From Chrysemys picta bellii (Eukaryota): DNA of 64,000 bases. Both the position numbers and the translations under genes were made by a program. Positions 61,700-64,000 of this stretch are shown here, piece after piece. A model generated the notes under the pieces. The model was not told where the DNA came from. It did no database searches and saw only the letters and a program-made list of their open reading frames with translations. Position 1 is the first letter of the stretch, and each line of letters opens with the position of its first letter. The stretch is taken from positions 201,500,001 through 201,564,000 of the forward strand of contig NC_088793.1 of NCBI RefSeq assembly GCF_011386835.1. The letters run 5' to 3'.

Positions 61700-61985
61700 A
61701 GTTACTTTTTGTTATTGTTATTTGTATTACAGTAGCACTGAGAGGCCCTGACAAAGAGAAGGGTTGCATTGTGGTAGGTGCTATATAAACACAAGAGACA
61801 GTGAGCCCTGAAGAACTTCAAACTGAAATACCCAAAACAGAAAAAGGAAGTTTTGTTATCGTCACAACTATCCATTTTATAGATGAGAAACTGAGGCATT
61901 TAAGTATCTTACCTAAGATTACACACACACAGTCTGTGACCAAGCTGGGAATAGAACCCTAATCTCCTGACTGTCTATGCCTTAC
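61700..61985 (-). mobile_element. MIR-like CORE-SINE, interrupted near its head by an LTR-like element
   Basis: TATCCATTTTATAGATGAGAAACTGAGGCA...GCTGGGAATAGAACCC. Confidence 0.8.
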
Positions 61986-62070
61986 TGTAAGGAGTTGGAC
62001 TCACCCCTGCGGCACCTCCTGCTGGTCCTCCTCAGGAATTAGCTCATCCCAGCTCCTGAGCGCCCTATGC
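61986..62070 (+). mobile_element. 5' part of a solo LTR-like element (family of 10468)
   Basis: TGTAAGGAG...ACTCACCCCTGCGGCACCTCCTGCTGGTC...GGAATTAGCTC...CCAGCTC...AGCGCCCT matches the start of 10468. Confidence 0.8.
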
Positions 62071-62603
62071 TAGGGTTACCATTCGTCCGGATTTACCCGG
62101 ACATGTCCTCCTTTTGTGTGCTAAAAATAGCGTCCGGGGGGAATTTGTAAAGCACTCACAATGTCCGGGATTTCCCCCTCCCCCGGCAGAGCGAGCGGCT
62201 GGGAGGGCTGCAGGAAAGTCCCGGGCTGGACTCCGGAGCAGCTTCCTCCTCCCACCCCCCCCTCCCTGCATTCTGAGCCGGCCGGCAGCTCCTCCTCCTG
62301 CAGCCCGCTCCGGCAGCCCTGTGCAGGGCCAGGGACCGGGTTTTGTGTTGTGCAGGGGAGCTCAGCCATGTGTCCGGCTGGCACAGAGCCCAACACCCTG
62401 TTCTGAGCAGCAGGGTAAGGGGGGGCAGGAGAAGGGACAGGGAGGTTCTGGAGGGGGCAGTCAAGAAACGGGGGGGGGGGCTTTTGGAGGGGAGTGGAGA
62501 AAGTTTTGGGCAGTCAGGGTACAGGTAGGGGGTAGGGTCCTGGGGGGCAGTTGGGGGGGGTCTTAGGAGGGGGCAGTTAGGGGACAAGGAACAGGGAGTC
62601 TTA
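62071..62603. mobile_element. hAT (Blackjack-like) MITE, left part, interrupted by R2
   Basis: TIR TAGGGTTACCATTCGTCC; subterminal GTCCGG/CCGGAC repeats; G-rich interior; no right TIR within the window. Confidence 0.85.
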
Positions 62604-62605
62604 AT

Positions 62606-62905
62606 GGCTCTCTTAATGGCTCTCCATGCGTCTCTGGACCCTCTCAGCTGTCGGGCTTGGACGGAAACATTGCCTGAGGGTAGTGAGAGAATGGGTTATC
62701 GGTGAGGTGGGGGTGGGCGTGAGCCCGGTCAATAGGGGCAACCCCTACCAAGATCTGAGCCTTTTCTCACACGCCCGTTAGAGCTCGACATTATGCTGTT
62801 TGGGACCCCTCTTTGAGGAAAGCCTCTGGATTGCAAGTCCAACCGCTACCTCCTCGTGGTGAGAGTCGGTAACTGGCTTGGATAGCCAGGCGGATTGCGG
62901 AGGAC
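62606..62905 (+). ncRNA. HDV-like self-cleaving ribozyme of the R2 5' UTR
   Basis: P1 GGCTCTC (62606-12 or 62618-24)/GAGAGTC (62861-67); P2 GTCC-AA-CCGC (62837-46)/GCGG-A-GGAC (62897-905); P3 ACC/GGT with L3 TCCTCGT; P1.1 CC/GG (62868-69); P4 CTGGCT/AGCCAG; candidate catalytic C62891. Confidence 0.85.
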
Positions 62906-62974
62906 GAACCCACATCCCACGTTCAGTGGGGTGTGGGACGGGGTTGGGCAGCCCCATATGGTGCCACATGGATG

Positions 62975-63159
62975 CCCCCCTGGTAAGGGTAGCCTCCCCC
63001 AGGTACGGGTTGACTCCCCCTGGTAAGGGTTAGATTCCCCCTGGTAAGGGTAGTTTCCCCCAGGCACGGGTTAGTTTCCCCCTGGAAAGGGTTAGTTTCC
63101 CCCAGGTACGGGTTAGTTTCCCCCAGGAAAGGGTTAGTTTCCCCCTGAGAAGGGTAAAT
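62975..63159 (+). repeat. About 9 copies of a 20-21 bp tandem repeat CCCCC(A/T)GGTA(A/C)GGGTTAGTTT
   Basis: Units begin at 62975, 62996, 63016, 63037, 63057, 63078, 63099, 63120 and 63141. Confidence 0.93.
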
Positions 63160-63168
63160 CTTTTAGCT

Positions 63169-64000
63169 ATGGAAAAAAGTAATTTATATTTTTATACCGG
63201 ATTGGCGCTGGACCGGGTTAATAACGCCCCCGCTGTTGGCTTTGATGCCCCGGCTGACAGTGTTAAATATATTAGGGGTGTGATCAGGGTCGCTGGACCA
63301 ATGGATAAAATGGTGTGGACTATAATGAAGTCTCATGAGAATGAGAGTGAGAATCAAGTCCTCCCAGTGGAGCATGGAGAGGAGGTAGAGGAGAATGTTT
63401 GTGATGATCATGGTGAGGAGATTTTATCTATCTTACCGATGGTTTTTACAAGGGACACTTTTAATGATTTAACTATGGACAGTTTTAATCCAGATTTTAA
63501 GTATTTAAGTACATTTGATGATCCATATGTTAGGGAATCAAGTACTGATTTTAATAGGGATCGTAATAAGGATCTTAACAGTATTGGTAGTAATATAAAT
63601 ATATTAGAAAGTAGTTCATGGAAGGATGGGGTTTTTTATTTAGAGTATCCCGTTGATAGTTTTAATTGTCCAATATGTCCCCAGATATTACCAACATTTG
63701 GTAAATGGGCCAAACACATTAATGTGGTTCATAAAAGTAAAGCCATACGAGTTGTATGTAGTAAATGTGGAAAATCTTCTCAATATCATAATATAGCTTG
63801 CCACTACCCCAAGTGCATACCCAAGAAGGCGGATACCCCAATGAAGAGCCATACGTGCTCGGTCTGTGGGCTTGGTTTTCATACTAGATCTGGATTGAGC
63901 CAACACTGTAGACATAGACACCCTGCTGTGAGGAATGAGCAAAGAAAAGAAGATATGGCTGCTAAAAGTAAGATCAAAGAGGGATCGATTAGATCTCGTA
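63169..64000 (+). CDS. R2 retrotransposon protein, N-terminal 277 aa (partial, runs off the window): acidic N-terminal extension plus three zinc fingers
   Basis: Hand translation, no stop in 277 codons: MEKSNLYFY...FNCPICPQILPTFGKWAKHINVVHKSKAIRVVCSKCGKSSQYHNIACHYPKC...HTCSVCGLGFHTRSGLSQHCRHRHPAVRNEQRKEDMAAKSKIKEGSIRSR; ZFs at 63667-63732, 63757-63816 and 63856-63921; start context GCTATGG. Confidence 0.9.
   Translation, partial: MEKSNLYFYTGLALDRVNNAPAVGFDAPADSVKYIRGVIRVAGPMDKMVWTIMKSHENESENQVLPVEHGEEVEENVCDDHGEEILSILPMVFTRDTFNDLTMDSFNPDFKYLSTFDDPYVRESSTDFNRDRNKDLNSIGSNINILESSSWKDGVFYLEYPVDSFNCPICPQILPTFGKWAKHINVVHKSKAIRVVCSKCGKSSQYHNIACHYPKCIPKKADTPMKSHTCSVCGLGFHTRSGLSQHCRHRHPAVRNEQRKEDMAAKSKIKEGSIRSR

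What the first reader, a model, noticed from the sequence alone, without database searches (positions are those of the whole stretch)
62594..62625. Junction mimics the 28S R2 target (18/23) and carries a 12-bp tandem duplication
Seen: GGGAGTCTTAATGGCTCTCTTAA aligns without gaps to 28S GGGAGTAACTATGACTCTCTTAA at 18 of 23 positions. The unit CTTAATGGCTCT is duplicated (62600-62611 and 62612-62623). GGGAGTCTTA fits the hAT interior, and a similar GGGGTCTTAGG occurs near 62557. Inference: the site may have been chosen or primed through 28S-like microhomology. ATGGCTCTCTTAA may be 28S-derived leader copied from a ribozyme-cleaved transcript, and the duplication may record re-priming or template jumping during 5' junction formation.
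Basis: partly seen in the sequence, partly recalled or inferred. Interest (0 to 1): 0.75.

Follow-up and report, generated by a model that had tools for sequence, protein, structure and literature searches.

The report
Turtle R2 5' junction, duplicated ribozyme strand
This is the front junction of an R2 jumping gene that landed outside the ribosomal genes of a turtle; its likeness to ribosomal RNA is real and comes mainly from the short strand that R2's self-cutting RNA needs, present twice through a perfect 12-base duplication whose origin could not be settled here.

Summary
The stretch from 62594 matches the 28S R2 site at 18 of 23 positions, the only such match on either strand of the window. 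The 12-base unit is perfectly doubled over 62599-62624.

The stretch is the 5' junction between a G-rich, transposon-like host repeat and a young clade-A R2. The R2 has three zinc fingers and an open frame from 63169 to the window end.

The core of the 28S likeness is GGCTCTC, at 62606-62612 and again at 62618-62624. It is the 5' strand of helix P1 of R2's HDV-like ribozyme. Its partner GAGAGTC lies at 62861-62867. In rDNA that partner pairs with 28S GACTCTC, the known "-13" cleavage type. GGGAGT and TCTTA look like host repeat.

So a 28S-derived leader is likely. A pre-existing host "target mimic" is mostly not supported, because most matching bases lie on the element side of the boundary.

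The duplication spans the presumed boundary. Perfect duplications of this kind are rare here (4 in 64 kb), which points to junction formation, but later slippage is not excluded.

The scan had already noted R2 in this repeat at other loci of the same genome.

The parts
62063..62605 (+). Host repeat upstream of R2. It has a DNA-transposon-like terminus with GTCCGG sub-terminal repeats, then a C-rich part and a G-rich part made of degenerate units. Both limits are approximate. The 3' limit (62603-62605) is inferred only from internal look-alike units.
Evidence: units GGGGGGTCTTAGGAGGGG at 62555-72 and GGACAAGGAACAGGGAG at 62582-98. No other copy in the window.
62594..62616 (+). Stretch matching the 28S R2 site at 18/23. 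The right 13 nt match at 12/13.
   Evidence: 28S sequence.
62599..62624 (+). Perfect tandem duplication, period 12, 2.2 copies (unit TCTTAATGGCTC), with a 2-nt TC overlap.
62606..62612 (+). First GGCTCTC: candidate P1 5' strand of the ribozyme. The predicted cleavage site is 62605/62606.
   Evidence: Duplex with GAGAGUC is 7 bp, -8.9 kcal/mol.
62618..62624 (+). Second GGCTCTC: alternative P1 5' strand. The predicted cleavage site is 62617/62618.
62625..62836 (+). J1/2 spacer of the ribozyme inside the R2 5' UTR, 212 nt (224 nt if counted from the first P1 strand).
   Evidence: Spacings of 23 to over 700 nt between the two P1 strands are reported for R2 ribozymes (PMC3774820).
62837..62905 (+). 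HDV-like ribozyme core. P2 62837-46 with 62897-905; P3 62848-50 with 62858-60; L3 UCCUCGU 62851-57; P1 3' strand GAGAGUC 62861-67; P1.1 GG 62868-69; P4 62873-78 with 62884-89; J4/2 62890-96 holding the candidate catalytic C.
   Evidence: Weak Rfam hits to HDV-F-prausnitzii (19.4 bits) and drz-agam-1 (18.5 bits), both below the gathering score. Helices checked base by base. P2 recovered by MFE folding, z = -2.5. The same P3-L3-P1' core occurs in rDNA R2 of a sawfly and a bobtail squid.
62976..63145 (+). 21-bp tandem array, 8.2 copies, in the R2 5' UTR just upstream of the ORF.
63169..64000 (+). Start of the R2 ORF. 277 codons are open to the window end, with three N-terminal zinc fingers (clade-A architecture).
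   Evidence: PDB sequence hits to R2Tg ORF (9dou, E = 2.8e-16) and R2 retrotransposon proteins (9nl3, 9nl2) over residues 158-263. Many R2-length relatives.

Best explanation
The stretch is the 5' junction of a recently inserted clade-A R2 retrotransposon with a G-rich, transposon-like host repeat.

The likeness to 28S has three sources:
1. GGGAGT and TCTTA(A) are host repeat. Look-alike units occur upstream in the same repeat.
2. GGCTCTC is the 5' strand of helix P1 of R2's HDV-like ribozyme. In rDNA this strand is supplied by 28S GACTCTC, 13 to 7 nt upstream of the first-strand nick. An R2 RNA cut there keeps a short 28S leader. Here the leader has become part of the element and carries one A-to-G change that keeps the pairing as G.U.
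3. The TTAA that completes the 12/13 match is the second copy of the junction's own CTTAA.

The 12-base unit TCTTAATGGCTC spans the host/element boundary and is perfectly doubled. It is most simply one slippage on a 2-nt TC overlap, either while the second strand was primed from the host end on the cDNA or shortly afterwards. The result is two alternative P1 strands, and so two possible self-cleavage sites, 12 nt apart.

Shown: the sequences, the pairings, and the rarity of the match and of such duplications. Inferred: the host/element boundary, the 28S origin of the leader, and the time and mechanism of the duplication.
For: - The 18/23 and 12/13 matches are unique in the window on both strands. 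Chance expectation is about 0.016 per window.
- GGCUCUC pairs over 7 bp with GAGAGUC, which directly follows P3/L3 (ACC-UCCUCGU-GGU). Duplex energy is -8.9 kcal/mol, against -9.5 for 28S GACUCUC.
- Only 26 heptamers in 64 kb of + strand can pair with that strand with at most one G.U. Two of them sit at this junction.
- All HDV-like helices are present.
- The identical core CCTCCTCGTGGTGAGAGTCGG occurs in rDNA-resident R2 of Neodiprion lecontei and Sepiola atlantica. There the annotated element starts about 50 and 4 nt before P3, so P1 must come from 28S (Table S2 of PMC13188248).
- Cleavage at -13 is a described type, for example TriCasB (PMC11331408; PMC3774820).
- Retained 28S leaders, microhomology priming, non-templated bases and tandem 13-28-nt leader duplications at R2 5' ends are documented (PMC3774820; PMC2718515).
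- Host units GGGGGGTCTTAGGAGGGG and ...ACAGGGAG upstream place GGGAGTCTTA in the host repeat.
- The duplication is 100% identical, so a single event is the simplest reading. It is one of 4 perfect duplications of period 8-30 in 64 kb, so chance placement within 15 nt of the junction is about 0.001.
- The R2 is young: the ORF is open and CpG observed/expected is 0.55, against 0.29 for the window.
Against: - No other R2 copy, no rDNA junction of this species and no empty copy of the host repeat could be obtained. The boundary (62603-62605) rests only on degenerate internal look-alikes.
- The bases AT at 62604-62605 are unassigned.
- If the element's own 5' end in rDNA begins TGGCTCTCC, the repeat could be a juxtaposition of leader and element rather than a duplication.
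- The Rfam scores for the ribozyme are far below gathering, and self-cleavage is untested.
- Read support for two units was not checked.
Confidence: 0.45

Rival explanations
1. Juxtaposition rather than duplication. The RNA came from an rDNA (or rDNA-like) master and began G(A)CUCUCUUAA + UGGCUCUCC... It carried an 11-nt 28S leader, and the element's own 5' end already resembles 28S through an old, fixed leader duplication. The cDNA end was joined to the host end ...TCTTA(AT) without annealing. This would be the Eickbush-type tandem leader repeat, seen here on a non-rDNA target.
For: - 62604-62616 matches 28S at 12/13, with AT, G.CTCTC and TTAA all in register.
- Tandem 13-28-nt leader repeats are described for several species. 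So are fixed 22-24-nt 28S duplications carrying 1-3 substitutions at R2 5' ends (PMC3774820).
- Joining without a heteroduplex is expected on a target that lacks the 28S upstream sequence.
Against: - It needs several coincidences to give 26 nt of perfect periodicity: the host TCTTA plus a 2-nt filler must equal TCTTAAT, the element start must be TGGCTC, and an A-to-G change must fall exactly where it makes the units identical in a young copy.
- Canonical cleavage would not leave AT on the RNA.
Confidence: 0.22
2. Ordinary replication slippage long after insertion, unrelated to retrotransposition. The 28S likeness of the doubled stretch is then partly an accident of the duplication.
For: - The copies are perfect and share a 2-nt flanking overlap.
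- Without the second unit the match to the 23-mer drops to 14/23 (read directly).
Against: - Only 3 other perfect duplications of this kind occur in 64 kb, so landing on the junction by chance is about 1 in 1000.
- It does not explain GGCTCTC itself, which is needed for P1.
Confidence: 0.15
3. Native host mimic. The repeat itself carries ...GGGAGTCTTAATGGCTCTCTTAA, and R2 begins after TTAA or after the second unit. The host repeat would then supply both the protein's upstream recognition sequence and the ribozyme's P1 strand, as 28S does in rDNA.
For: - Vertebrate clade-A R2 proteins read a long stretch of upstream target DNA with ZnF1-3 and Myb (bioRxiv 10.1101/2024.11.11.623112).
- Off-target insertions would be enriched at the best mimics.
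- Earlier scan notes report insertion at the same nucleotide of this repeat at two other loci (s1-323756, unverified here).
Against: - Internal units of the repeat predict ...TCTTAGGAGGGG, not ...TCTTAATGGCTCT.
- No copy of the repeat was available to test this.
Confidence: 0.12
4. Assembly artefact: the second 12-nt unit is an assembly or polishing error.
For: None directly. Read support could not be examined.
Against: - Nineteen public runs from 14 studies hold at least half of the sampled 31-mers of 62000-63200, though that does not resolve the unit number.
- Short perfect non-homopolymer duplications are not a typical assembly error.
Confidence: 0.03

Closest known systems
R2 elements whose HDV-like ribozyme cleaves in upstream 28S (the -13 type, e.g. 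Tribolium castaneum R2-B/TriCasB), leaving a 28S leader on the RNA (Eickbush, Burke & Eickbush 2013, PMC3774820; PMC11331408)
   Same: The P1 3' strand GAGAGUC is complementary to 28S GACUCUC at -13 to -7. The P3/L3 core is identical to that of rDNA R2 in a sawfly and a squid. The long J1/2 spacer is within the reported range. The element is clade A.
   Different: The upstream DNA here is not 28S. The P1 5' strand is GGCUCUC, with one G.U pair, and it is present twice.
[quoted passage not shown]
   Same: A short direct repeat lies exactly at the R2 5' junction and involves the sequence that forms P1. It can be explained by joining of the cDNA end without a heteroduplex.
   Different: The unit is 12 nt and perfect. 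It appears to span host-repeat and element sequence rather than being pure 28S, and the target is non-rDNA.
Non-rDNA R2 copies in Drosophila species (Stage & Eickbush 2009, PMC2718515)
   Same: R2 lies outside a 28S gene.
   Different: The Drosophila copies were often incomplete and 1-2% diverged. This copy has an open ORF start and a complete-looking ribozyme. Earlier notes of this scan (unverified here) say the same repeat is hit repeatedly.

Membership tests
R2 non-LTR retrotransposon, clade A | Three N-terminal zinc fingers, homologous to those of known R2 proteins | tested here: met
   Three Cys/His motifs lie in residues about 167-250 of the ORF. PDB sequence hits to R2Tg ORF 9dou (E = 2.8e-16) and R2 proteins 9nl3 and 9nl2 cover residues 158-263. 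R2-length relatives were found.
R2 non-LTR retrotransposon, clade A | Reverse transcriptase and restriction-like endonuclease domains, and a 3' UTR bound by the protein | not testable with these tools
   The window ends at codon 277 of the ORF. The rest of the element lies outside the window.
R2 non-LTR retrotransposon, clade A | Insertion at the conserved 28S site ...CTCTTAA|GGTAGC | tested here: not met
   The upstream DNA is a G-rich repeat, not 28S. No 23-mer within 3 mismatches of the 28S site exists in the window, and the best match is 18/23. The copy is an R2 by its protein and ribozyme but sits off-target.
HDV-like self-cleaving ribozyme | Nested double-pseudoknot helices P1, P1.1, P2, P3 and P4 in canonical order, with a C in J4/2 | tested here: met
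   All helices were located and checked base by base. P2 was recovered by MFE folding. The P1 duplex is 7 bp.
HDV-like self-cleaving ribozyme | Score above the curated threshold of an Rfam HDV-type model | tested here: not met
   HDV-F-prausnitzii scored 19.4 bits against a gathering score of 44. drz-agam-1 scored 18.5 against 37. This is expected, because the 212-nt J1/2 spacer removes P1 from the modelled stretch, so the result weakens the claim only slightly.
HDV-like self-cleaving ribozyme | Self-cleavage immediately 5' of P1 | not testable with these tools
   This needs an in vitro cleavage assay or mapping of RNA 5' ends.
Eickbush-type 5' leader duplication | The repeated unit equals the upstream target sequence retained on the ribozyme-cleaved RNA | tested here: inconclusive
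   The unit contains the P1 strand and TCTTAA, as the 28S leader does (12/13). It also seems to contain host-repeat bases. The rDNA junction of this species could not be obtained.
Eickbush-type 5' leader duplication | Present in some copies of a family and absent from others | not tested
   No other copies could be fetched.

The most novel reading that the evidence does not exclude
An R2 lineage in emydid turtles has taken a dispersed DNA-transposon-derived repeat as a second home. The repeat, or the leader now fixed at the element's 5' end, supplies the ribozyme's P1 strand in place of 28S. The CpG-rich upstream half of the repeat, which has promoter- or exon-like features, drives transcription. 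Copies outside rDNA could then keep making correctly processed RNA and re-insert at the same nucleotide. The two-unit junction would be the non-rDNA counterpart of the leader duplications seen in rDNA.
Probability: 0.15. Interest if true: 0.8.

Novelty: new variant of a known kind. Interest (0 to 1): 0.45.

Why it matters
R2 is the model site-specific retrotransposon and is being engineered for gene insertion at rDNA. How its 5' junction forms, and what happens when it lands off-target, are open practical questions.

A young, complete-looking R2 outside rDNA that still carries a working-looking P1 strand would show that the 28S leader travels with the RNA. It could then keep the ribozyme functional away from rDNA. 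The doubled junction would be a natural record of second-strand priming on a target that lacks the normal heteroduplex partner.

If the duplication and the strand turn out to be host sequence, the locus would instead define a natural off-target recognition site for a vertebrate clade-A R2 protein.

Tried and rejected
No letters of 61864-61899 were sent to any search tool afterwards. They were masked in the local BLAST database.
- **The search for homologous proteins with the 277-aa N-terminus** found only a Gopherus fragment (71% identity over 62 aa) and a contaminated MAG protein.
- **The search for homologous proteins with the minus-strand ORF of the host repeat** found nothing.
- **The search of protein representatives** gave R2 relatives of at most 49-71% identity and no near-identical copy.
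- **Exact scans of metagenome contigs and genome contigs** used the ribozyme core and the R2 5' 20-mer. They gave nothing, except one chance match in a bacterial-looking contig, L001, which diverges right after the 20-mer.
- **No other copy of the host repeat** exists in the window, even at word size 7.
- **Supplementary tables** of PMC13188248 and PMC5035012, and a full-text search for the junction strings, hold no turtle R2 5' sequence.
- **The search of earlier findings by sequence** was blank.
- **Rejected reading: the whole 23-mer as a 28S-derived block.** The four central mismatches, and the look-alike host units, argue that GGGAGTCTTA is host repeat.
- **Rejected reading: the 23-mer as a pre-existing target mimic.** Most matching bases are on the element side of the boundary.
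- **The hAT label** for the repeat could not be tested.

Full report
**What is there**

The last 1.4 kb of the window is the 5' part of an R2 retrotransposon.
- An ORF starts at 63169 and stays open for 277 codons to the window end. It carries three N-terminal zinc fingers.
- Its zinc-finger region matches the solved R2Tg ORF (9dou, E = 2.8e-16) and two other R2 retrotransposon proteins (9nl3, 9nl2).
- The representative search returned many R2-length relatives, but none above 49-71% identity.
- CpG observed/expected is about 0.55 in the R2 part, against 0.29 for the window and 0.10 for the flank. This fits a young insertion.
- Earlier notes of this scan say the genome is the painted turtle. 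They also say R2 sits in the same small repeat at other loci (s1-323756, s1-323773). I used these as leads only and could not test them.

**The observation**

- 62594-62616 matches the 28S 23-mer at 18/23 without gaps. I checked the 28S sequence against the 84-nt target printed in bioRxiv 10.1101/2024.11.11.623112.
- It is the only 23-mer on either strand of the window with 17 or more matches; the next best has 16. The right-hand 13-mer is the only 12/13 match.
- Chance expectation is 1.3e-7 per position, about 0.016 per window.
- The 12-base unit is perfectly doubled over 62599-62624, 2.2 copies.
- Only four perfect non-microsatellite tandem duplications of period 8-30 exist in the 64 kb. Chance placement of one within 15 nt of the R2 5' end is therefore about 1 in 1000.

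**Why it looks like 28S**

About 230 nt downstream lies a complete-looking HDV-like ribozyme core:

| Element | Coordinates |
|---|---|
| P2 | 62837-46 with 62897-905 |
| P3 | 62848-50 with 62858-60 |
| L3 (UCCUCGU) | 62851-57 |
| P1 3' strand (GAGAGUC) | 62861-67 |
| P1.1 (GG) | 62868-69 |
| P4 | 62873-78 with 62884-89 |
| J4/2, with a candidate catalytic C | 62890-96 |

- The P1 3' strand is the exact complement of 28S GACUCUC. That sequence lies 13 to 7 nt upstream of the first-strand nick.
- Cleavage at -13 is a described R2 type, for example TriCasB (PMC11331408; PMC3774820).
- The identical core CCTCCTCGTGGTGAGAGTCGG occurs in rDNA-resident R2 of the sawfly Neodiprion lecontei and the squid Sepiola atlantica. 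There the annotated element begins only about 50 and 4 nt before P3, so P1 has to be supplied by 28S (Table S2 of PMC13188248).
- In this locus there is no 28S upstream. GGCUCUC at 62606-12 and again at 62618-24 pairs with GAGAGUC over all seven positions, at -8.9 kcal/mol against -9.5 for the 28S strand.
- The one difference from 28S is an A-to-G transition, which turns an A-U pair into G.U.
- Only 26 heptamers on the + strand of the window can pair with that strand with at most one wobble, and two of them are here.
- The core of the 28S likeness is therefore the ribozyme's P1 strand. That strand is either a 28S leader carried in on the RNA or an imitation of one.

**Assigning the remaining bases**

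- The host repeat upstream is built from degenerate G-rich units. GGGGGGTCTTAGGAGGGG lies at 62555-72 and GGAGAAGGGACAGGGAG|GTTCTGGAGGGG at 62428 onward. These resemble ...GGAACAGGGAG|TCTTA at the junction.
- This places GGGAGTCTTA in the host repeat. By analogy, the uninterrupted repeat would continue with GG..., not ATGGCTCT.
- The boundary is thus around 62603-62605. The bases AT at 62604-05 remain unassigned.
- About 12 of the 18 matching bases lie on the element side. The 18/23 match therefore cannot have been what the R2 protein saw before insertion. At most TCTTA(A), followed by a predicted GG, resembles 28S TCTTAA|GG.
- That small resemblance still matters in principle. Vertebrate clade-A R2 proteins read upstream target DNA with their zinc fingers and Myb domain. 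A host 3' end ...TCTTA could also anneal to cDNA copied from a leader ...UCUUA.... Neither point could be tested.

**The duplication**

The unit TCTTAATGGCTC appears to hold host bases (TCTTA), the unassigned AT and element bases (GGCTC). Its two copies are identical over 26 nt. I weighed four readings.

- **(a) Junction-spanning slippage.** A slip on the 2-nt TC overlap, during second-strand synthesis or soon after, is a single event. It explains the perfect identity and, through the rarity of such duplications, the position.
- **(b) Juxtaposition.** An 11-nt 28S leader (GACUCUCUUAA) would meet an element whose own first bases are TGGCTCTCC, joined to the host end without a heteroduplex. This has direct precedent in the 13-28-nt tandem leader repeats and the fixed 28S duplications of other R2s (PMC3774820). 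It needs several coincidences, plus the A-to-G change, to give perfect periodicity.
- **(c) Unrelated later replication slippage.** This is disfavoured by the position.
- **(d) Native host mimic.** This is disfavoured by the internal units of the repeat. It is the reading with the largest consequences.

I put these at about 0.45, 0.22, 0.15 and 0.12, with 0.03 for an assembly error. Whatever its origin, the consequence is two alternative P1 strands 12 nt apart. They predict RNA 5' ends at 62606 and/or 62618.

**What could not be done**

The decisive comparisons were out of reach. These are the rDNA junction of this R2, other non-rDNA copies, empty copies of the repeat, the orthologous site, and read support.
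- Exact scans of the metagenome and prokaryote-genome collections gave nothing relevant. L001 is a chance 20-mer match.
- The window holds no second copy of the repeat.
- Nineteen runs from 14 studies and several organism labels hold at least half of the sampled 31-mers of 62000-63200. Their shares are 0.60-0.80, more than the R2 half alone could give. Near-identical repeat sequence therefore exists in related animals, but the junction itself could not be inspected.

**Verdict**

A 28S-derived, ribozyme-linked leader is likely. A target mimic is mostly not supported. Duplication during junction formation is plausible but unproven.
- This is a new variant of known R2 5'-junction behaviour on a non-rDNA target, and it is of moderate interest.
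- The scan had already noted R2 in this repeat on other DNA of the same genome.

Noticed in passing
window 62976-63145: A 21-bp tandem array (8.2 copies, 84% matches, consensus CCCCCAGGTAAGGGTTAGTTT) fills the R2 5' UTR just upstream of the ORF start at 63169. Its function is unknown.
   Followed up: no
window 62063-62420: The upstream half of the host repeat is CpG-rich for this genome (observed/expected 0.48, against 0.10 in the flank). It has GTCCGG sub-terminal repeats, and an ATG followed by a GTAAG-type splice-donor look-alike (about 62369-62417). It lies in the same orientation as R2 and could supply read-through transcription of the element.
   Followed up: partly
window 62000-62066 and 10484-10549: An 82%-identical 68-nt match shows that the sequence just upstream of the host repeat belongs to another interspersed repeat.
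   Followed up: no
protein P0002: A protein annotated as coming from a Gallicola sp. metagenome-assembled genome is 67% identical to the zinc-finger region of this R2. It is probably animal R2 DNA binned into a bacterial MAG.
   Followed up: no
window 62606-62617 (minus strand): The reverse complement of TGGCTCTCTTAA (TTAAGAGAGCCA) matches the 28S sequence downstream of the R2 site (TTAAGGTAGCCA) at 10/12. The 28S site is partly palindromic, so likeness alone cannot tell which side of 28S a short junction motif imitates.
   Followed up: partly
   Followed up: no
window 63496-63511: A perfect 8-bp tandem duplication (TTTAAGTA x2) lies inside the open R2 reading frame. The frame stays open, so it is part of the native coding sequence.
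   Followed up: no
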